DNA of 64,000 bases, taken from assembly GCF_006345805.1 (NCBI RefSeq), contig NW_021832859.1:48708-112707 (forward strand), given 5' to 3'. This DNA is from Octopus sinensis. Its lineage: Eukaryota. This document shows, piece after piece, positions 9,716-57,354 of this stretch (its first letter is position 1; the number at the start of each line of letters is the position of its first letter). A program made the position numbers and the translations under genes. The notes beneath the pieces are model-generated. The model saw nothing but the letters and a program-made list of their open reading frames with translations. It did not search any database and had not been told where the DNA came from.

Positions 9716-10563
9716 TTCGGCATTCTTACTTTGTGTTCCTTTGAAGCATCTGCCTCCTTTCATTTCATATTATCAAGTTGTTTTCGGAAGACATGTTATA
9801 ATGGCAATTATTTGCTGCAATGGATTCGCATCAGTGACTGGAATCACTTGAAATGGTAAGCATTGTGTAGAATAAATACAATGTAACTTTAGGAAGAAAC
9901 AGTAAAATGAATAAACTCAATGTCTCCTATCTCTCTTTTTCTCTCTTTCCATACACACACATGTATGTGTGTATATAAAATGTTTTATATATATATATAT
10001 AATTAAATATGTACATATATAAACACCTCTCTGTCTCTCTCAGTATATACATCTTTTTATATATTGTGCATGCATTTATATACGTGTGTGTATCATATAT
10101 AAACGTTTGTGTGTCTACAACCACACACACACACACACACGCACACATCGATTATTTACTACCGCTTCTGACTTGATTTTTTTTAATTGTGTTTGTATGT
10201 GTGAATACGGTGTTTGTCATGCAAGCCACTATTGTTGAATGGCTGTGTGCAGCCGGATGTTAAAGCTGAAACTTTAAAAGGATGACATTGCAAGAATAAA
10301 GACGGTAATATTGAATGATATAAAATTGAATATAAACAGCACTTTTACAGGTATTCGTTTATTAAATTATATCTTGCTTCCAGACTTGTTAAAAATTTGG
10401 TTGAAATATCTTGTTGCTGTTTAAGAACGTCAGTGAATATACAGTTTACTGCTCTATGATAATTCGGTAAAAATTAAATGAAAAATAATACATTACACGT
10501 TTAGAAAATTCAGCTTTAACTGGTTCGCACCGCTATCAGTTTACTATGTTATAATAATAATAA

Positions 10564-10926
10564 TCTATATATATATAAACGGCAAAATGTCTGCGTGTGT
10601 GTCCTTTATACAAATCCACAATTTTTTAGTTGGAGGGCTCGCACTTTCTATAGTCATTTAAAACCGTCCAAGGGCGGTCGTGCATATCTTTACATTTCCC
10701 AAGTCACCCCGCAAAGCCATTAAAAATCAATAGAAGTGACTTTTTTGTGAATTTTCTATCCAAAACCCAATCAAAATGCCTGAAACTTGATACGCCAATT
10801 GCATGCCAGCTAGCTGTATGTGATTGGTCGGAGATTTGGACAGTACTCGCGTGTATGTGCGCACGCACGCAGCTGTATATGCATGTACTAGCACTATGAC
10901 CCGGCAACGCCAGGTCATAGTGCTAG
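10564..10926 (+). mobile_element. Non-autonomous Helitron
   Basis: A|TCTATATATATATAAAC 5' end. Subterminal hairpin GCACTATGACC...GGTCATAGTGC. CTAG|T 3' end; no TSD. Confidence 0.8.
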
Positions 10927-11130
10927 TCTATAATATAAAATCCGTTCTGTCTGTGTGTGTGTCTTCTAGGATCTCGGGCATCCTCCATCCGATTGCGCTC
11001 AAATTTGATATGTAGATACCGACTGTGTCAGGGCGTGTATAAGTCTTGAAAAAATTACAAAAATCGATTCCAGGCGAGAATGCGATCGATAAAGTGAATA
11101 AAATCGCTTTTCTTTGGAATAGAAAAAAGT
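10927..11130 (+). mobile_element. 5' part of a second Helitron abutting the first
   Basis: TCTATAATATAAAATCCGTTCTGTCTGTGTG starts immediately after the CTAG; no 3' end identified. Confidence 0.55.
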
Positions 11131-11613
11131 CTATCTTTATTTCTTCTTTTGCTGGTGTTTCAAATTTAGGTTTAATCAGTGTTTCTCAAAGGGGAGGCCT
11201 ATGGGACGGTTGGACATGTTGCTTTGAGAAAATTTAGTTTAAATATTTGACGACGCAGCACCGCCCATTGGGCGGGGGTCATTTTGCTCGTAATATATAA
11301 TAACGTTGTGACAAATCATTTAAGGAAATTGTCGAAAATTTCACCAAGGAAATTTTCCTTCATAGGATCACTATTGTTACACAGCTAACTTAAGAGTTGT
11401 GGTTGTATAGATGGCCATATATTCTGTACTATCGTGGAACATATTTGAATCAGATGCCGTAACAACACTTTTAGACCAAACTGTATACATTCGTAAAACA
11501 TTTTACTGATTCCATTATTTCCCAGGGTTAATCCAGAAATATAATGGTGTTCGGTCTGATATTATTAATTGCACATTATATTATCTATATTCAACATAAA
11601 TATTATTATTATT

Positions 11614-11993
11614 GAGTGAGAGAGCAGTTCATACCATCAAAGTGACACTGGGGTAAAATATACGAGGCCCAATATGCCCATCATGACTACCCGTCTGATA
11701 AGGGTACACCAGGCACATGCATCACAACCATATGTGCGCGACATGGTGATCTTATATCAAGATAAACAGCACATGACCTTGCAGGTGGGGCCCAGTTAGA
11801 ATTTTCTTCAGGTTGAGTAGCCCATCCCGCTCAAAAGGTCCCTGAATAAGGGTTATTTAAGGATGTTGAAAGAACCACCCATGTTTCCATAGGTGAATTA
11901 TTTAAACCCCAAAGAATCCCTCTCAACACATGGCTATGATGCTCCCCCACTACTTCTGCTCGTGATCAGAGATGCACATATCGTCAGCCACTA
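11614..11993 (-). mobile_element. Element E, truncated copy between (TTA)n tracts
   Basis: Near-identical to 54642-55020 and 55831-56200. Strand inferred from which end is retained. Confidence 0.85.
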
Positions 11994-12025
11994 TTATTAT
12001 TATTATTATTGTTATTATTATTATT

Positions 12026-12222
12026 TGTTTGACCTGCTTTGTATTTATACAAGTTGACTCCAAATCTCATCCAGAGACCTCAAGAGACAACAAGTTAAAA
12101 GTTCATGGTGTTATGCCTAGGGGTTCATATATTTGGCTTTGCACATAGTATTGTTCTTGAGAATGTTTAAGAAAACAAGAAAATTATGAGTTTGTTTTAA
12201 AATTTGAGATTACATAGTATTG
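12026..12222 (-). mobile_element. Probable 3' end/UTR of an (AAT)n-tailed retroelement
   Basis: Abuts (TTA)n. The minus strand begins ...ACAATACTATGTAA, resembling the ILSx* end of the RLE ORF at 56.6 kb. Single copy in this window. Confidence 0.4.
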
Positions 12223-19884: not shown

Positions 19885-21190
19885 CTATGTTTTCTTCTAA
19901 AGGTCATGTTTAGGTATTATTCTTATTATTTCTTGGGTTTATTAGTTTTCCCTTTGCTTGCTTCAAGTAGAAAATATATATCAGCTCCTAGTTGCATTAT
20001 TTGCCGGTTTATTCTTTCCAGCCATGCAGGCTGCTTGTGTACTTTGCACCCTTTTTATCTATCTCTAATTTTAATACCGCATTTCTGAGTTGCAACATAC
20101 GCAGCTGAGTAAAGGATTTGATCAATCACTCCGAGGGAATTTTCTCTGCTATTGTCAAGGACTTGTATCAATATTCCAAGTGCTTGATCACATTCTTTGG
20201 TTAGTTTTCTGTTTTTGTTACTATAATTTATGAAGTGGGGCTCTTTCGTGGAAAGGTTGATGTAATTGTATTAGATATTGTTCTAGTATTCCATCTAACA
20301 GATCATTGCTGACTCGATTATCTATACTGTTTTTAGTATCAACTAATGGTTCACCTTCATAGGTTTCTGTGTACCTAATTTGCTGGTTCAAGTTCGTGCT
20401 TTCAGAGCTTTTTGCCTGTGGGTATTAGTGAGTGTGTGTTATACTGGTCTGATTATTTTGTCAATCTCCTTGTCTGTTAGTCTTTTAGTTTTAGGATATC
20501 ACGTCTCACAGCTCCTAGTTTATTACTGTCTATGCACAGCCTGCTATGCGGGTTTTTGCATCTCCAGGCATTGTAGGTCCATTTTTGTGTGGTTAATGTT
20601 TCTGGGTTCAGTGTTGAATAATAATTAGCATGCTTAACTTCGATATATTCATCCTTAATCCATTTCTGTCTTGTGTTTCTATTTCTTTGAGATAGGTTTA
20701 GTGGTGGATCCTGAGCGTCAGTTTCGGGAATAACCCTGGTTTGATTTGATACAGGTTCTTAAGGAGCTTGGTCCTGATTTAAAGACTTTTCGAGCACAGT
20801 GTCAGAACTCAATGTCACTGGGGCTATTTCCATGGTTGGTATCCAGGGCCGTGCTATAAGCGCACTGGGTCAACCAGTTGTCTGGTCCCTTGGGTAAGGA
20901 TAAGATGTCCTAGGCACCATCATGTTCCTGTGGGGTAGGAGAATTATTTTGAGAAGTTTTAAATTAGTTCATGTCGTGATCTGCCGCCTGGAAGGTGTCA
21001 AAAAGGGGCAGATATTGAATTGACAGCCAGGGGAAGATAGAGACAGGGAAACGAAAGACAGAACCATCATGCAATCTCCAAATAGCATTACCTCCGAGCT
21101 ATTTCCAATAGGACGGGGATGCCATTGGCGGCGGCGGTGGTAGAGCTGGTAATGGGATTGTATATTTCTGTTAGAAGGATGTAAACTCTG
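19885..21190 (-). pseudogene. Decayed 5' portion of an RLE-type (R4/Dong-like) non-LTR retrotransposon
   Basis: From ATG 20833: RQKWIKDEYIEVKHANYYS...TYNAWRCKNP...SNKLGAVRRDILK/KRLTDKEIDKI, then IDQILYSAAYVATQKCGIKI...HKQPAWLERINRQI. These resemble R4/Dong N-terminal blocks (recognised from memory, no alignment run). An (ATT)-rich tract lies upstream at about 21225-21285. Confidence 0.65.
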
Positions 21191-21588
21191 TCGCATCTAT
21201 GTGTGTGTTTGTCTCCGGGCAAATCACTATTATCATTGTTATTATCAGTAGCATTATTATCATCATTATCGTTGTTGTTGTTACATTACTACTCCGCCAG
21301 CTCACCGCCCGGTTGAAGCGAATGTTAGTAAATGAAATAATAGGATATTTAATTGAAAATCTCTGCTTCAATAAATGAAATTTGATCTGGTTATTATTTT
21401 TTAAAATGTGAGCATTTAAAAGATATTCATCGAAGTACCAATCTAATAATGAGTTGAACTTAAAGTATCAACTCCATAGTTCTTAATTTCCCACGCTATC
21501 ATAACACTGGAATTGATACATTCATGCATATATCCATCCACACATACATGCATACATGCACGCATGTTTACATACACTTGAACACATA

Positions 21589-33789: not shown

Positions 33790-33843
33790 TTACAAAGCAA
33801 ACTCAAAATTTTAATGATAAAATTAATAATAATAATAGTAATC

Positions 33844-33876
<33 letters not shown>

Positions 33877-34280
33877 CTAATGGCAATAATAATATAACAA
33901 TAATAATAATGATAGTAATAATATTAATGATAGTGAAAATAATATTATTATTAATAATATCAATGATAATAATGATATTATTAACAATAATAATATTAAT
34001 AACAATAGCTATAATAACAATAATATTAACAATAATATTAATAACAGTAAACATTAATAACAATATGAATAATAATAATATTAATAACAACAATAATAAT
34101 ATTAATAGCAATAATATTAACAGTATTAATAATAATATTAACATTAATATTAATAACAATATTAATAATATTAATAATATAATAAGAATAATAATGTTAA
34201 TAACAATAATAATAATATTAATAACAATAATATTAATAACAATATTAACAACAATAATACTAAAGATAATTATATGGAAA
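33790..34280. repeat. Long degenerate (AAT)n
   Basis: Direct reading. Confidence 0.95.
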
Positions 34281-34410: not shown

Positions 34411-35611
34411 ATTAGGTTGTCAAGAAACTTTTTTCTGGCTTTTAACCTTAAAATTCAGATGCGCATATCTCAGCTCAAACAAAACTGTATTAATTGAAAT
34501 AAACACTATCAGAATCAACACACTTTTCCCAAAGCCAAATAATTTTATTTATGCCAGTAGCGTAAAAATCTTGCTTTCTGTTGGCGATGAAGTCGTTGAA
34601 AGTGTGTTTGCCATCAACTTGGTTTTTGAAGCATTTCTCATGCAGGATTTTGTGGAGATGCTTGAAAAAGTAGTAGTCGGTAGGTGAGAGGTCTGGTGCG
34701 AAGGGCGGATGAGGCAGAGTTTCGTAGCCTAATTCTTTCAACTTCTGGAAGGTTAGTTATGCGACGTGCGGCCGAGTGTTGTCGTGGAGAAGAATTGCTC
34801 CTTTTCTATTGACCAATGCTGACCGTTGTTGTCGGAGTTTCTTATGCATTTCATCCATTTGTTGACAGTACTTCCAAGCTGTAATGGTCTAGCTTGGATC
34901 CAAAAAGCTGTGATGGATGAGACCGACAGCAGACTACCAAACAGTCACCTTGACCTTTTTTGGTGCAATTTTGGCTTCGTCAAGTGGTGTGGAGCTTCGG
35001 TGGCGTCCAACCACTTAGCTGAGCGTCACCGGTTGTCATAAAGAATTCACTTTTCTTTGCAAGTCACAATCCGGTTGAGAAACAGGTCATTCTTGTTGCC
35101 TAAAAATTGGGAAGACGACACTTCCAAATGGCGTTTTTTATGTGGGGTGGGGGTTGTCGTTCAATTTGTGTGACACCTATTTCTCAAGTATTTTTGTTTT
35201 TCCAATCTCTTTCAAGTGGTTGGAAATTGTCGTAAACATTACGTCTAATTCAGAAGCAAGCTCTCGAACAGTTGTGCGTGGATTGGTTTCGACTAAGGCT
35301 CTTAGTTGATCGTTGTCAACATCCGACCACTACGCTTATCTTCTTCAAGACACTCGTCATCGCTAAGAAATTCTCGAACCACCATTGTGCTGTACGTTCA
35401 TTAGTGGTTCCTGCACTAAACACATCGTTGATATCGCGAGCTGCTTCAGCAGCTTTTCGGCCTAGCCTGAACTGGAATAGAAAATTGCGCGAAATTGCTT
35501 TTTGTCCATGTTGTATTCAACGTTCCGGAAAAATGGCCTAATTATTCAAAAAGAAAAAGAGTAACACTATTAGATGGAGGGTAAAACGAGCTTTAAAAAG
35601 ATATATTCCTA
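34411..35611 (-). mobile_element. Decayed mariner (Hsmar1/cecropia-like N-terminus)
   Basis: MDKKQFRAIF..GRKAAEAARDINDVF..TNERTAQWWF near 35510 and HPPFAPDLSPTDYYFFKHL. TIR-like ATTAGGTTGTCAAGAAAC at 34411; the 5' TIR is not found. Confidence 0.88.
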
Positions 35612-35701
35612 GGCGGAATTTGAGCTCAGAACGTAGCGGCAGACGAAAAACCGCTTAGCATTTCGCCTGGCGTGCTAACGTTTCTGCCAGCTCGCCGCCT
35701 T
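35612..35701 (-). mobile_element. Family-B SINE, 5' half only
   Basis: Head through the B-box present; core and tail absent. Confidence 0.85.
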
Positions 35702-36124: not shown

Positions 36125-36455
36125 AAAATATATTCAACCACGCTAGTGGTTGAATGATAATGATAATATTAATAAAAACAATAATAATAATAACAATATT
36201 AATAGCAATAATAATAGAAATAATATTAATAACGACAACATTAACAATAATAATATTAACAATAATAATAATAATAACAACAACAATAATAATACCAATA
36301 ATAACAACAACAATAGTAATAATGCTAATACTAACAACAACTATAATATAATATTAATAATAATCTTAACAGCAATAATATTGAAAACAATATTAACAAT
36401 ATTGATAACAATAATAACAATGATAATAATAACAACAACAATAATAAGCGCATAT
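36125..36455. repeat. Degenerate (AAT/AAC)n
   Basis: Direct reading. Confidence 0.95.
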
Positions 36456-37314
36456 TAGTTAATCAAATCCTTCTCGGGTACATTTGATCCTCTTACATGG
36501 GTGTGGTTGTGAACTTGGTTGGTTGGAGTTGGGCCAGTTCTCGTTCAAGTGAACATCCAAGTTTGTATCCAGTGAGTTTCTTCGCCCTCTGTGTTGGGAA
36601 GACACTTGATAAGAAATGGAAACAAAATGTAGAGAAAATAAAAAAAACAGCTGTAAAAATGATAAGTAGAAGAATGAAAAGAACAGGAAGATGAAAAAGA
36701 GGATGAGGAAGAGGAGGTGGAAATGTACTTGGGAGTGTGACAGAAAATATATCTCTATTTCAGACTGGTGGATAAGACGTTTAGCTGAATGGAAATACCT
36801 GGATGCATAACGTTTTAGATTGATGAGTGTGCATATATATGCAAATATATATGTGTATATATATATATATAAGCAAATATACATACGTGCACATTATTGC
36901 ACACAACGTACGTTCTTCTTTTCTCCTACACATACACTCATACGATTCTTCCTGATATGCACACGAGCTTACGCGCACGGATTTTTAGCGGGGCACTATT
37001 ATCTCCCCTTCCATTCAACCTCTTCCGTGTGGTCATTTAAGCATGTGAAACCATTAATCCAGACATAATTTTTCCTCTCCCCGTTTTCTTCCATTGGTTC
37101 CGTTTCTTTCCTCAGTTCTTTCTATCGAAGAGTGCTGGCTCGAGATGTCGAAAATTTTCCATTTTTTCCTCGACATCAAAATAATACGCATCATTTGTTC
37201 TTCCCCTATCTGTTTCTTTCTATTGATTTTTCTACATTCAAAGTCTCTCTCTCTTTCTGTGTATATATATATATATATATATACACATATGTGTGTGCGT
37301 CTTTGTATATATAA

Positions 37315-38277: not shown

Positions 38278-38655
38278 TATTTCTTTACTACCCACAAGGG
38301 GCTAAACACAGAGGGGACAAACAAGGACTGACAAACGGATAAAGTCAATTATATCGACTCCAGTGCGTAACTGGTACTTAATTCATCGACGCCGAAAGGA
38401 TGAAAGGCAAAGTCGACCTCGGCGGAATTTGAACTCGGAACGTAGCGACAGACGGGGGCTAAACACAGAGGGGACAAACAAACGGATTAAGTCGATTACA
38501 TTGACCCCAGTGCGTAACTGGAACTTAATTTATCGACCCCGAAAGGATGAAAGGCAAAGTCGACCTCGGCGGAATTTGAACTCGGAACGTAGCGACAGAC
38601 GAAATACGCTAAGCATTTTGCCCGGTGTCCTAACGTTTCTACCAGCTCGCCGCCT
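38278..38655 (-). mobile_element. SINE family B with an internal ~170-bp duplication
   Basis: Two cores inside one TSD (ATGAACCAAATACC at 38264-38277 and 38657-38670). Confidence 0.9.
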
Positions 38656-53800: not shown

Positions 53801-54377
53801 CCAGCTGCTTCAGATGGCAAGATATGAAAGTCAAGTACAACGGTTTACCATTTTTCAAAAGTGTAGTAAGTCCCACATAAGGCAGTTTTGTAAAAATCTG
53901 TCTAACTGAAAATAGCATACTTGCATGGTGTTACGATTTTATGCACCCAACGAAGTATTATTGTTAAACTGAAACGGTTGCTAATGTAAAAAGAAATGGA
54001 ACGGTGACACTATTTTTTCGTTTTCTAGAAAAGCTACGTTTTGGACTTACGACACTTTTCGATAAAAGTAACATACATTTGAATACGTGTGTATGAGTGA
54101 CAGTCTAGGAAACCTGGAGGATTTTAACAACCAATGTCTAGAGCAGATCGGTTCTGTCAAGTACTGAAGGGCATATGTTTCTGACCCCCGAAATATACGT
54201 GTAGCAATCACCCCTATATTCATGCACCTTTCGTACCTTCGGGGTGTATAACATAAGTATCTTTTGAATCCTGGTGTCAATTTAATCGGCTTCGTCCTTC
54301 CCGCAGAACGGCTGGCCTAATACCAAAATGTGAACTCCTTATTATTCTTACTAAAGAGGCGTTCTGACACAATCTTT

Positions 54378-54565
54378 AGTACGCTGGGTAAAATGCTTAA
54401 CAGTGTTTCATCCGTCTTTACTTTTCTGAGTTTAAATTCCGCCGAGCTCGACTTTGCCTTTTATCCTCTCGGAGTCGATAAAATAAGTACCAGTTGAACA
54501 CTGGGATCTATACAATCAACTCATCCCTCCCCCAAAATTGCTGCCCTTGTGGCAAAATTTGAAAC

Positions 54566-54567
<2 letters not shown>
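54378..54567 (+). mobile_element. Old family-B SINE ending in a (TTA)n tail
   Basis: GCCGAGCTCGACTTTGCC...CCCTTGTGGCAAAATTTGAAACCA followed by ATT repeats to 54641. Confidence 0.85.
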
Positions 54568-54617
<50 letters not shown>

Positions 54618-54641
54618 GTTATTATTATTATTATTATTATT

Positions 54642-55197
54642 GAGTGAGAGAGCAGTGCATGCCATCAAAGTGACACTGGGGTAAAATATACGAAGCCCAA
54701 TATACCCATCATGACTACCCGTCTGATAAAGGTACACCAGGCACATGCATCACAACCATATGTGCGCGACATGGTGATCTCATATCAAGATAAACAGCAC
54801 ATGACCTTGCAGGTGGGGCCCAGTTAGAATTTTCTTCAGATTGAGTAGCCCATCCCGCTCAAACGGTCCCTGAATAAGGGTTGTTTAAGGATGTTGAAAG
54901 AACCACCCATGTTTCCAGAGGTGAACTATTCAAACCCCATAGAATCCCTCTCAACACATGGCTATGATGCTCCCCCACTACTTCTGCTCGTGATCAGAGA
55001 TGCACATATTGTCAGCCACGAAGGGACATGCTCAACTGGTTAAGGTCAAACAACTGACAAGCAAATCTGTGGTATTGAGCAGAATATTTGCTGTAGCCCA
55101 TCTTTTATACCAAGACAAAACAATGTACATGATAACACTTCCAATCAGTTAAGATCAGAAGCCATGAGAGCCACTGCCTGGTACTGCATCAGGGCAT
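54642..55197 (-). mobile_element. Element E, apparently full length (~556 bp)
   Basis: Same two ends as 55831-56374; (TTA)n on both sides. Confidence 0.88.
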
Positions 55198-55232
55198 TTA
55201 TTATTATTATTATTATCATTATTATTATTACT

Positions 55233-55380
55233 TTTTTTTTTCTTCTTTCAAATTTTCTTCCATTTCTTGCCGAGTGTCTTGCAGACTCCTAGGGCAAAGA
55301 AACTCATAGTGTATATTGGTAGGCCATTAAACCAAACTCGTCCATTTAAAAAATTTTTTTTAAAGCTAAATTAAAATACA
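55233..55380 (-). mobile_element. Short 3'-end-like fragment between (TTA)n tracts
   Basis: Shares a ~55-bp motif with 36573-36628, which also lies next to (AAT)n. Confidence 0.55.
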
Positions 55381-55386
55381 TTATTA

Positions 55387-55436
<50 letters not shown>

Positions 55437-55439
<3 letters not shown>

Positions 55440-55750
55440 TAGTTATATTTTCATAGCGTGCTTTCACTTCACTACCGTGCGCAGCTTTGTGTGCCTTGAG
55501 TATGTGCTGTGGTTTGCTGTGATGCTCTTATGGTTACGAGATTGAAAGTGTTTTGTTGTGCCCATTCGTGCAATTTTCTGTATGTTATATATAATTGTAA
55601 GTCCTGCTGTTTTTGTTAAGTATTTGTCTGTATTTATCATACCTAATGCGCCTACTATGATAGGGATTGTTTCTCTTTTTAGATTCCACATTCGATTTAC
55701 CTCTATTTCCAGGTCTTTGTATATTGAATGTTTCTCCATTTCTTTTAGAG
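55437..55750 (-). pseudogene. 3' end of an RLE-type (R4/Dong-like) retrotransposon
   Basis: SLKEMEKHSIYKDLEIEVNRMWNLKRETIPIIVGALG...NIQKIARMGT, then a 3' UTR and (AAT)n. Confidence 0.85.
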
Positions 55751-55795
55751 AATTATTATTATTATTATTATTATTATTATTTATTATTATTATTA

Positions 55796-55827
<32 letters not shown>

Positions 55828-55830
55828 ATT

Positions 55831-56373
55831 GAGTGAGAGAGCAGTGCATGCCATCAAAGTGACACTGGGGTAAAATATACGAAGCCCAGTATACCCATCA
55901 TGACTACCCGACTGATAAGGGTACACCAGGCACATGCATCACAACCATATGGTGATCTCATTTCAAGATAAACAGCGCATGACCTTACAGGTGGGGCCCG
56001 GTTAGAATTTTCTTCTGTTCGAGTAGCCCATCCCACTCAAAAGGTCCCTGAATAAGGGTTGTTTAAGGATGTTGAACGAAACACCCATGTTTCCAAAGGT
56101 GAATTATCCAAGCCTCCAAGAATTTCTTTCAACACATGGCTATGATGCTCCCCCACTACTTCTGCTCGTGATCAGAGATGCACATATTGTCAGCCACTAA
56201 GGGACATGGTCAACTTGTTGAGGTCAAACAACTGACAAGCAAATCTGTGGTATTGAGCAGAATATTTGCTGTAGCCCATCTTTTATACCAAGACAAAACA
56301 ATGTACATGATAACACTTCCAATCAGTTAAGATCAAAAGCCATGAGAGTCACGGCCTGGTACTGCATCAGGGC

Positions 56374-56374
<1 letters not shown>
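55831..56374 (-). mobile_element. Element E, apparently full length
   Basis: Co-linear with 54642-55197; (TTA)n on both sides. Confidence 0.88.
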
Positions 56375-56462
<88 letters not shown>

Positions 56463-56468
56463 ATTATG

Positions 56469-56521
<53 letters not shown>

Positions 56522-56524
<3 letters not shown>

Positions 56525-56895
56525 CTAGTCTAATTTTTATCACGTGCTTTCAGTGCACTACCGAGCGCAGCTCAGTGAACCTTGGGTATGTGCTGTGGTT
56601 TGTTGTGATGTTTTCGTTTTCACTTTATTGAAAGTATTTTACGTAGAATGTGTGCGGTGCCTAGTAATGTTATGTTCTGTATATTACATATACTTATAAG
56701 ACCTGGTGTTTTGTTATGTATTTTTCTGAATGGTTTTTTTTTTTTTATCACACCTACTGCGCCCACTATAATAAGAATAGTTTATGTTTTTAGACTCCTC
56801 ATTCGAGTTACCTCTGCTTCCAGATCTTTGTATTTCGAAAAATTCTTCGTTTCTTTTAGAGAAACATTGCCAGCTGTCAGTATTGATACATCGAT
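56522..56895 (-). pseudogene. 3' end of an RLE-type (R4/Dong-like) retrotransposon, second copy
   Basis: IDVSILTAGNVSLKETKNFSKYKDLEAEVTRM...IIVGAVG...NIQNITLLGTAHILRKILSIK* (RLE-like D...K..KY motif). 3' UTR is similar to the copy at 55437. Confidence 0.87.
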
Positions 56896-57354
56896 TATTA
56901 TCAATATTAATATTACTAATATTATTGATAATAAGACCTCTATCTACCAAGGGCGTTGATCCAGTAGTAATGCACACACCTAATCATGAGAGGGGAAATT
57001 TATGGATAAGATAGACAGTCAAGAGACGAAAGTTGGATGATAATCTTATAAGATATAGAAAATTAATAGCATGTAGGTGGCTGTCTATTTGATTAAGAAA
57101 CTAATTCGAAGGAAGAAAGATCAGCCAAGAGAAAATTAATTATCCTATATTGGCTGTAAGGTTATTAAGAAAATGTCAGGTAATTTACACACATCATCGG
57201 TATTCGATTAAAGAGGCTATTCACAACTTTCTAAATAATTAGCTACTGTCATGAAAGTCTCCCTTTGGTAAATATAGAAAGTCACACTTAGCTATGATCT
57301 GTATAAATTCGTAAGCATAGCTTCATATCAACATGCACATATAGTAATGTAGTT

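What the first reader, a model, noticed from the sequence alone, without database searches (positions are those of the whole stretch)
54378..56935. Self-propagating (TTA)n landing pad: five stacked retroelements seeded by a SINE tail
Seen: an old family-B SINE ends in (TTA)n. Then follow element E, a short 3' fragment, an RLE-LINE 3' end, element E again and a second RLE-LINE 3' end, each separated by (TTA)n. The two RLE ends read on the minus strand and end in (AAT)n; the same polarity is inferred for E and the short fragment. Established: Dong/R4-clade RLE retrotransposons can target TAA repeats. Inference: one SINE tail created the target and each insertion regenerates it. The result is a multi-family guild (autonomous RLE LINEs plus non-coding passengers) that piles up at microsatellites.
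Basis: partly seen in the sequence, partly recalled or inferred. Interest (0 to 1): 0.78.

Follow-up and report, generated by a model that had tools for sequence, protein, structure and literature searches.

The report
Retroelement pile-up in a TAA microsatellite
A TAA/TTA microsatellite in an octopus-like genome has been hit at least five times by TAA-specific Dong/R4-type retrotransposons and by non-coding elements with the same tail, which illustrates a known targeting habit rather than a new mechanism.

Summary
Between 54.35 and 56.93 kb, a SINE is followed by five retroelement pieces: E, a 149-bp fragment, a LINE 3' end, E again and a second LINE 3' end. All five read on the minus strand. 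Each is bounded by (TTA)n on the plus strand, which is (TAA)n in the element's own sense.

The two LINE ends encode the C-terminus of a restriction-like-endonuclease (RLE) LINE. Their full-length relatives are about 1100 aa, with a central RT, a CCHC motif and a C-terminal RLE. In 58 related loci from other animals, 35 carry a sense-strand (AAT)n tail and 1 an antisense one. Similar stacks occur elsewhere (L001, L011, L076).

The literature already states that Dong elements target (TAA)n in insects, molluscs and cnidarians, and that Dong-R4 LINEs are abundant in Octopus.

A composite segmental duplication is rejected. E1/E2 are 92% identical but the two LINE ends only 73% (p = 9e-15), and E1 is closer to a copy 43 kb away than E2 is.

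E is a roughly 555-bp non-coding element. It has a fixed 5' end and one 5'-truncated copy, and every boundary seen is a TAA repeat. It shares no 3' UTR with the LINE copies.

Seeding by the SINE tail is unproven, because the SINE also has TTA-like sequence on its 5' side.

Verdict: new members of a known kind, of modest interest.

The parts
54338..54353 (.). TTA-like tract (CTTATTATTCTTACTA) directly 5' of the SINE
   Evidence: It matches (TTA)n at 13 of 16 positions. Only 12 other places in about 61 kb score as high. It suggests a pre-existing TTA-like target or a target-site duplication.
54354..54566 (+). SINE, 'B' subfamily (3' end ...CAAAATTTGAAACC), old copy
   Evidence: It is 75-84% identical to 15 other copies in the window.
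54567..54641 (.). (ATTATC)3 then (ATT)n, the least pure of the five TRF-called arrays (88%)
   Evidence: TRF; sequence.
54642..55197 (-). E1, a non-coding element of about 555 bp, apparently full length
   Evidence: 92.4% identical to E2 and 96.3% to E3. It has the same 5' end as E2. It has no ORF longer than 60 aa within E and no Rfam or tRNA hit.
55198..55230 (.). (TTA)11
55231..55379 (-). 149-bp fragment whose minus strand ends ...GAAGAAAAAAAAAAAG before (TAA)n
   Evidence: Sequence. It is 76% identical over 75 bp to 36573-36647. It has no similarity to E or to the LINE 3' UTRs.
55380..55436 (.). (ATT)19
55437..55751 (-). 5'-truncated Dong/R4-like LINE: the last ~70 codons of the ORF, with a decayed C-terminal end, plus the 3' UTR
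   Evidence: Translation; tblastn from 58 homologues; alignment A1.
55752..55827 (.). (ATT)25
55828..56374 (-). E2, full-length copy with an 11-bp deletion
56375..56522 (.). (TTA)50, the longest array
56523..56893 (-). 5'-truncated Dong/R4-like LINE: the last ~92 codons from '..IIDVSI..', with one stop, plus a 3' UTR of about 100 nt
   Evidence: It is 73% identical to the other LINE end and has a different truncation point.
56894..56927 (.). Degenerate TAA-like remnant at the far edge of the stack
   Evidence: Sequence. It resembles the degenerate arrays at 33.9-34.2 kb.
11611..11993 (-). E3, a 5'-truncated E copy (3' 378 nt) lying between (TAT)4 at 11601-11613 and (TTA)11 at 11992-12025
19929..21215 (-). 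5' part of a decayed Dong-like LINE (5' UTR plus N-terminal ORF). A degenerate TAA-type array lies upstream at 21216-21300 and AATAATAAGAATAATA follows it at 19913-19933
   Evidence: tblastn to residues of about 58-231 of full-length homologues; sequence; translation.

Best explanation
The locus is a (TAA)n/(TTA)n microsatellite that has served repeatedly as the integration target of TAA-specific, RLE-encoding non-LTR retrotransposons of the Dong/R4 kind. Non-coding RNAs with the same kind of (UAA)n 3' end have used it too.

Inferred mechanism, by analogy with R2 and Dong:
- The element's RLE nicks the repeat.
- The (UAA)n end of the RNA pairs with the nicked (TTA)n strand, and reverse transcription starts there (TPRT).
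- This fixes the element's orientation relative to the repeat.
- It often gives 5'-truncated copies and leaves (TAA)n on both sides of the new copy.
- Each hit therefore turns one array into two, so the locus keeps or gains targets and accumulates a head-to-tail stack.

Shown here: the layout, the orientation rule, the RLE-LINE identity, the independence of the copies, and the same tail and stacking in relatives from other animals.

Inferred here: that the Dong enzyme moved E and the 149-bp fragment, that tails are copied from RNA rather than being only split target, and what first created the array.
For: - Layout and strand.
- All 7 (TTA)>=4 arrays in the window touch these elements.
- The LINE ends match 58 proteins at E = 3e-20 to 9e-7. 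Those with N-terminal extensions show the motif 'KPDI..ID..P.D..K..EK.SKYKDLE'.
- A profile search finds 13,347 cluster representatives, including proteins of about 1100-1200 aa with the domain at the extreme C-terminus.
- Six of these have a central RVT_1 and a weak, below-cutoff zf-RVT match over the CCHC region, with no APE domain and no zinc finger near the N-terminus.
- The best solved relatives are R2 proteins, and the C-terminus aligns to the R2 RLE 'KPD..DV..EK..KYK.LE.E'.
- In 80 related loci, (AAT)>=4 lies within 300 nt 3' of the ORF end in 35 of 58, against 1 of 58 for the antisense repeat. Overall there are 91 sense and 7 antisense arrays.
- Stacks of 5'-truncated copies separated by (TAA)n occur in L001 (at least 5 in 4.3 kb), L011 and L076.
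- E: 3 of 3 copies in the window have TAA repeats on both sides and the same orientation. One is 5'-truncated at the end expected for minus sense. A fourth copy, in an O. bimaculoides gene model, has the same 5' boundary followed by poly-Ile, which is (ATT)n.
[quoted passage not shown] Dong-R4 has 5 recently active families and 1129 insertions in O. vulgaris (PMC13282606).
Against: - Placement in the R4 clade rests on architecture, tail and target. No RT phylogeny against reference elements was run.
- E and the fragment share no 3' UTR similarity with the two LINE copies; alignment scores equal those of shuffles. A specific partner is therefore not identified.
- The fragment's only relative in the window (36573-36647) has no TAA repeat at its 3' end.
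- No ribozyme or small-RNA signal was found at E's 5' end or at the 5' end of the Dong-like copy at 21.2 kb.
- The sample for E is 4 copies.
- Array growth by slippage or unequal exchange cannot be separated from tail addition.
Confidence: 0.8

Rival explanations
1. The block is a tandem or segmental duplication of one composite unit [E-(TTA)n-LINE end], later modified.
For: The order E, LINE end, E, LINE end recurs with a period of about 1.1-1.2 kb.
Against: - E1/E2 differ at 42 of 554 aligned positions but the two LINE ends at 90 of 331 (Fisher p = 9e-15).
- E1 is closer to E3, 43 kb away (14/378), than E2 is to E3 (39/383; p = 5e-4).
- E2 alone has an 11-bp deletion.
- The LINE ends have different 5' truncation points.
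Confidence: 0.03
2. The array pre-dated the SINE, or arose from the SINE's target-site duplication. The SINE is then another tenant of a TTA-like tract, not the founder.
For: - A TTA-like 16-mer sits directly 5' of the SINE, and such sequences are rare in the window (12 places in 61 kb).
- The opposite edge of the stack is an old degenerate array of the kind seen at 33.9-34.2 kb.
- Other B-type SINE ends in the window mostly lack ATT repeats.
Against: The array next to the SINE begins with (ATTATC)3. That looks like a reiterated SINE 3' terminus ('ACCAATATC' in another copy) and could mutate into (ATT)n. One other copy ends in (ATT)3.
Confidence: 0.45
3. Accumulation is passive. The elements carry (TAA)n tails but insert without sequence specificity, and clustering comes from unequal exchange between tails or from weak selection in a junk region.
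For: Arrays of 33-148 bp could expand by slippage. Recombination between arrays is plausible.
Against: - No non-repeat DNA lies between neighbouring elements.
- TAA repeats lie at the 5' junctions too, including at truncated copies.
- The orientation rule holds in 91 of 98 arrays in other taxa.
- The same stacking occurs in unrelated genomes.
- Published biochemical and genomic work treats Dong as target-specific (PMC3812793, PMC7998251).
Confidence: 0.07
4. E and the 149-bp fragment are not moved by the Dong-like families seen here. Their partner could be an unseen TAA-specific LINE that shares their 3' ends. For the A-rich-tailed fragment it could be a poly(A)-type LINE that happened to land in the repeat.
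For: - There is no 3' UTR similarity to the two LINE ends.
- The fragment has an A-rich run before the TAA repeat, and its relative has no 3' TAA.
- Octopus has several Dong-R4 families (PMC13282606).
Against: For E, all boundaries seen are TAA repeats with the Dong orientation. The partner is therefore in any case TAA-specific.
Confidence: 0.3

Closest known systems
Dong (Bombyx mori) and Dong-like elements of the R4 clade (DongAg, DongBg; Dong-R4 of RepeatMasker/Repbase)
   Same: - A single ORF with a central RT and a C-terminal CCHC plus RLE, and no APE domain (seen in full-length relatives).
- A (TAA)n tail on the sense strand.
- Insertion inside (TAA)n.
- Frequent 5' truncation.
- Presence in molluscs, and abundance in Octopus.
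   Different: - The window holds only decayed pieces: two 3' ends and one 5' part.
- Clade placement by RT phylogeny was not done.
- No 5' HDV-like ribozyme was detected at the one 5' end present.
R2 and its non-autonomous SIDE derivatives (rDNA-specific RLE LINEs)
   Same: - RLE-type endonuclease; R2 proteins are the best solved-structure matches.
- Target-specific TPRT into a repeated sequence.
- Non-coding dependants that use the same site.
   Different: - The target is a microsatellite, not 28S rDNA.
- E shows no sequence derived from the LINE copies or from the 5' part present here, whereas SIDEs are internally deleted R2s (this last point is from my own knowledge, not checked here).
Other microsatellite-specific LINEs (Kibi, Koshi, Waldo, Mino, Togen, some HERO families)
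   Same: The target is a simple repeat, and the element's tail matches the target.
   Different: Kibi, Koshi, Waldo and Mino are APE-type and use other repeat units (PMC3812793). Togen, related to NeSL, uses (TG)n (PMC4640811).

Membership tests
R4/Dong clade of RLE non-LTR retrotransposons (the two LINE ends) | C-terminal restriction-like endonuclease (CCHC, then PD..D..K) | tested here: met
   - LINE end 2 keeps '..IIDVS..K..KYKDLE..' and LINE end 1 keeps the part from 'K..YKDLE' onwards.
- Homologues extend to 'KPDI..ID..P.D', and CCHC is visible in L001.
- The region aligns to the R2 RLE.
- The PD motif itself lies upstream of both truncation points.
R4/Dong clade of RLE non-LTR retrotransposons (the two LINE ends) | Single ORF with a central RT, no APE endonuclease and no N-terminal zinc fingers | tested here: met
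   - Shown for six full-length homologues of 1100-1204 aa: RVT_1 at about residues 450-760, a weak zf-RVT match (below Pfam's cut-off) near the C-terminus, and no other domain apart from one weak below-cutoff coiled-coil match in P0193.
- The window copies are too truncated to test.
- A separate N-terminal piece at 19929-20770 matches the same proteins.
R4/Dong clade of RLE non-LTR retrotransposons (the two LINE ends) | (TAA)n tail and insertion into (TAA)n with fixed orientation (Dong lineage) | tested here: met
   - Window.
- Relatives: 35 of 58 with a sense (AAT)n tail against 1 of 58 antisense.
- Some relatives have other tails.
R4/Dong clade of RLE non-LTR retrotransposons (the two LINE ends) | RT phylogeny groups it with R4, Dong and Rex6 rather than R2, HERO, NeSL or CRE | not tested
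   - No reference sequences of the named clades were available in the tools.
- Relatives occur in Lepidoptera, shrimp and coral-associated contigs. These taxa overlap the Dong set of PMC7998251, which is suggestive only.
R4/Dong clade of RLE non-LTR retrotransposons (the two LINE ends) | 5' HDV-like self-cleaving ribozyme at the junction with the TAA repeat (shown for Bombyx Dong, PMC3774820) | tested here: inconclusive
   An Rfam scan of the only 5' end in the window (20700-21350) found nothing meaningful. That copy is decayed, and covariance models handle this pseudoknotted fold poorly.
SINE (for element E) | Head derived from tRNA, 5S, 7SL or snRNA, with an internal pol III promoter | tested here: not met
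   No Rfam match at E <= 1 and no ARAGORN hit in 54300-57000.
SINE (for element E) | 3' end shared with the partner LINE | tested here: not met
   Local alignment of E's last 150 nt to both LINE 3' ends scores 14-15 against a shuffle mean of 14. Other octopus Dong families could not be compared.
LINE-dependent non-autonomous retroelement in the broad sense (for element E) | Non-coding, a constant 3' end with the LINE-type tail, 5'-truncated copies, multiple dispersed copies | tested here: met
   - No ORF above 60 aa lies within E, and longer listed ORFs only run on into the flanking repeat.
- Three copies lie in the window and homologous stretches occur in three gene models, two of them named O. 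bimaculoides.
- E3 is truncated at the end far from the tail.
- (TAA)n lies at every boundary.

The most novel reading that the evidence does not exclude
Dong-type enzymes in octopus may recognise little more than a (UAA)n 3' end. If so, unrelated non-coding RNAs such as E, the 149-bp family, and perhaps 3'-truncated LINE RNAs like the piece at 19.9-21.2 kb, can all ride on them. (TAA)n arrays would then behave as self-renewing landing pads that grow into mixed-family TE islands and contribute to genome expansion in octopods.
Probability: 0.3. Interest if true: 0.5.

Novelty: new member of a known kind. Interest (0 to 1): 0.3.

Why it matters
It gives a clean worked example of how a microsatellite-specific LINE reshapes its own target. 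Every insertion splits one array into two and adds a tail, so a simple repeat becomes a stack of dead elements.

It also points to a non-coding element in octopus, E, that I found no published description of in the few literature searches run here. E uses the same target without sharing the LINE's 3' UTR, which bears on how strictly RLE-type reverse transcriptases choose their RNA.

For annotators there are two practical consequences. Many (TAA)n 'simple repeats' in cephalopod genomes are probably Dong tails. Predicted octopus proteins containing E are probably spurious or exonised.

Tried and rejected
- Pfam on the two short LINE peptides gave only noise.
- A PDB profile search with the C-terminal alignment alone gave no meaningful hit. 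The full-length homologue was needed.
- Exact-protein look-ups for the window's own ORF and for the O. bimaculoides proteins P0030 and P0059 found no contigs. No octopus genomic context beyond the window could therefore be fetched, and E could not be mapped genome-wide.
- Searching E's ORF translations found only three gene models.
- Rfam and ARAGORN on the stack found nothing.
- RNA folds of E's 5' and 3' ends and of the LINE 3' UTRs are unremarkable, with z-scores from +0.2 to -1.9.
- E against the Dong-like 5' fragment shows no similarity.
- The 1993 Dong paper (PMC309301) is not held.
- Composite duplication was considered and rejected on unequal divergence.
- I looked for a tRNA-like promoter in the middle of E by eye (A/B-box-like strings). 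I rejected it because no tool supports it and its position would not explain E's 5' end.
Full report
**What is there**

A SINE in + sense, about 54354-54566, is followed by five blocks of non-repeat sequence. Perfect or near-perfect trinucleotide arrays separate the blocks. The arrays read TTA/ATT on the + strand and have 25, 11, 19, 25 and 50 units at 88-96% purity. A sixth, degenerate remnant at 56894-56927 closes the block. The five blocks are E1 (54642-55197), a 149-bp fragment (55231-55379), LINE end 1 (55437-55751), E2 (55828-56374) and LINE end 2 (56523 to about 56893). The window has 36% G+C and no Ns.

**Is it more than chance**

Only seven perfect arrays of at least four TTA-type units occur on the + strand of the 64-kb window. 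Five are the arrays of this stack. The other two flank a third copy of E at 11611-11993. No 'free' (TTA)n array exists in the window.

**The LINE ends**

On the minus strand, both pieces translate into the end of an ORF, followed by about 100 nt and then (AAT)n.
- LINE end 2 reads '..IIDVSILTAGNVSLKETKNFSKYKDLEAEV..IVGAVG..LLGTAHILRKILSIK*'.
- LINE end 1 reads '..SLKEMEKHSIYKDLEIEVNRMW..IPIIVGALG..'.

A protein search with LINE end 2 returned 58 short proteins (E = 3e-20 to 9e-7), one of them from Octopus bimaculoides. Longer hits extend upstream to 'HTDREI.ANKPDIV.K....C.LID..VPSD.N.S.K..EK.SKYKDLEIE', a PD..D..K nuclease signature.

A profile of these sequences finds 13,347 cluster representatives in the 1.84-billion-protein library. 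They include proteins of 1000-1200 aa in which the domain is at the very C-terminus. Six such proteins have a central RVT_1 domain and a weak, below-cutoff zf-RVT match over the CCHC region before the C-terminal domain. They have no APE endonuclease and no zinc finger near the N-terminus.

The best solved-structure relatives are R2 proteins (E = 5e-28). The C-terminal region aligns to the R2 RLE segment 'KPDLIF..VVDVTV..EK..KYKHLETE'. Full-length relatives occur in shrimp, many Lepidoptera and a psyllid.

**Tail and target in relatives**

One scan of metagenome contigs gave 80 loci, largely host DNA in host-associated samples, judging by the sample series. With loci oriented by the ORF:
- (AAT)>=4 lies within 300 nt after the ORF end in 35 of 58 evaluable loci, at a median of 97 nt.
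- The antisense repeat does so in 1 of 58.
- Over all loci there are 91 sense-strand and 7 antisense arrays.

A 16-kb contig from another organism (L001) shows the same picture as the window. At least five differently truncated LINE 3' ends and several shorter 3' fragments, all in one orientation, are separated by (ATA/AAT)n within 4.3 kb. L011 and L076 show smaller stacks. Stacking in (TAA)n is thus a general habit of this clade.

**Literature**

- TAA microsatellites are the listed target of Dong in Bombyx, Anopheles and the snail Biomphalaria (PMC3812793).
- Most RLE clades are target-specific (PMC4640811).
- Dong-R4 LINEs are abundant in cephalopods (PMC8967140), and 1129 insertions of 5 families count as recently active in O. 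vulgaris (PMC13282606).

Architecture, tail, target and host all fit Dong/R4. I did not run the RT phylogeny that formally defines the clade.

**Element E**

E1 and E2 are 92.4% identical and end at the same base at both ends. The third copy is 96.3% identical to E1 and carries only the 378 nt next to the 'GAGTGAGAG' end. It sits between (TAT)4 and (TTA)11. If E moves by target-primed reverse transcription, the retained end is the 3' end, so E is in minus sense, like the LINE ends.

E has the following properties:
- No ORF above 60 aa lies within E itself; the longer listed ORFs only run on into the flanking repeat.
- No match to the LINE proteins.
- No Rfam or tRNA hit.
- No similarity to the LINE 3' UTRs, with scores equal to shuffles, whereas the two LINE UTRs match each other strongly.
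- No similarity to a Dong-like 5' fragment elsewhere in the window.

Its only database relatives are stretches inside three predicted proteins, two of them named as O. bimaculoides. In one of these, E's 5' boundary is again followed by poly-Ile, that is (ATT)n, and then by different sequence. That is an independent fourth copy.

E is therefore a discrete, non-coding, multi-copy element with a Dong-type tail and target. It fails two defining tests of a SINE: no small-RNA head, and no 3' end shared with the LINEs seen.

The window is probably from an octopod. This is an inference from E's relatives and from the SINE family.

**The 149-bp fragment**

On the minus strand it ends in 'GAAGAAAAAAAAAAAG' and then (TAA)n, which supports minus polarity. 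Its one relative in the window (36573-36647, 76% over 75 bp) lies just 3' of a long degenerate AAT-type array, in the same relative orientation. That relative ends in an A-rich run without TAA. Its family and mode of transposition remain open.

**Duplication rival**

If the block were a duplicated [E-array-LINE] unit, both parts would be equally diverged. They are not: 42 of 554 positions differ for E and 90 of 331 for the LINE ends (p = 9e-15). E1 is closer to the distant E3 than E2 is (p = 5e-4). The LINE ends have different truncation points, and E2 has a private 11-bp deletion. The copies are independent insertions.

**The seed**

The array next to the SINE starts with (ATTATC)3. That looks like a reiterated SINE terminus, since another B-type copy ends 'AACCAATATC', so a tail-derived proto-microsatellite is possible.

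Three observations argue the other way:
- Only one of four other B-type ends in the window has even (ATT)3.
- The SINE has 'CTTATTATTCTTACTA' directly at its 5' end, a score reached at only 12 other places in 61 kb.
- The far edge of the stack is an old degenerate array like those at 33.9-34.2 kb.

A pre-existing TTA-like tract, or the SINE's target-site duplication, explains the data at least as well. This sub-claim cannot be settled without orthologous sites.

**Mechanism**

The best-supported reading is repeated TPRT by a TAA-specific RLE LINE. The repeat is nicked, the (UAA)n RNA end pairs with the (TTA)n strand, and cDNA synthesis follows. This explains several features:
- the single orientation;
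- the 5' truncations;
- TAA repeats on both sides of every copy;
- the fact that each hit leaves two arrays where there was one.

The five TRF-called arrays total about 390 bp, and the inner ones are purer than the outermost ones. This fits the addition of fresh tails, but slippage could do the same.

That E and the fragment are moved in trans by a Dong enzyme is an inference from shared tail, target and orientation.

**Verdict**

What may be new is modest. E is a non-coding, TAA-tailed octopus element without LINE-derived sequence. The data also show that such arrays collect several unrelated families and occur in many animal genomes. I rate it a new member of a known kind, with interest 0.3.

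Noticed in passing
window 19913-21300 (minus strand): A decayed 5' part of a Dong-like LINE (5' UTR plus about 300 N-terminal codons). On its sense strand a degenerate TAA-type array lies directly upstream, and only AATAATAAGAATAATA follows it. A LINE piece that keeps the 5' end and lacks the 3' end is unusual; it suggests deletion or exchange between arrays, or reverse transcription of a shortened RNA.
   Followed up: partly
window 33824-34250 and 36180-36440: Two long degenerate AAT/AAC/ATT arrays on the + strand bracket about 1.9 kb. That interval holds a mariner-like transposase C-terminus (34490-34741, minus strand) and a SINE piece (35609-35700). It looks like an old TAA-type array split by later insertions.
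   Followed up: partly
L063, L075, L051, L052, L010, L022, L024 (3' of the ORF end): Some relatives of the LINE do not end in pure (TAA)n. L063 and L075 have (ACT)4(AGT)4 on a 3' UTR otherwise like a TAA-tailed relative (L076). L051 and L052 have GAT/AAT mixtures. L010, L022 and L024 have poly(A). This hints at shifts of tail and perhaps of target within the clade.
   Followed up: no
L001 1830-2580: One of the stacked LINE copies in this foreign contig is interrupted by about 750 bp of unrelated sequence. Two RVT_1-encoding genes of another orientation lie nearby (9898-12096, and from 16150 onwards).
   Followed up: no
proteins P0059, P0060, P0061 (P0059 and P0060 are UniRef O. bimaculoides entries; P0061 is an unnamed metaclust entry): Predicted 'uncharacterized proteins' contain translated antisense E sequence and poly-Ile or poly-Asn runs from the flanking repeat. 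They are probably mis-annotated or exonised repeats.
   Followed up: partly
window, 15 SINE copies (e.g. 1133-1468, 38348-38631): The main SINE family often occurs as head-to-tail or partial tandem pairs, at 1133-1230 followed by 1330-1468 and at 38631-38490 followed by 38440-38348. It ends in ...CCTTGTGGGTAATAAAGAAATAGG, which differs from the B-type end.
   Followed up: no
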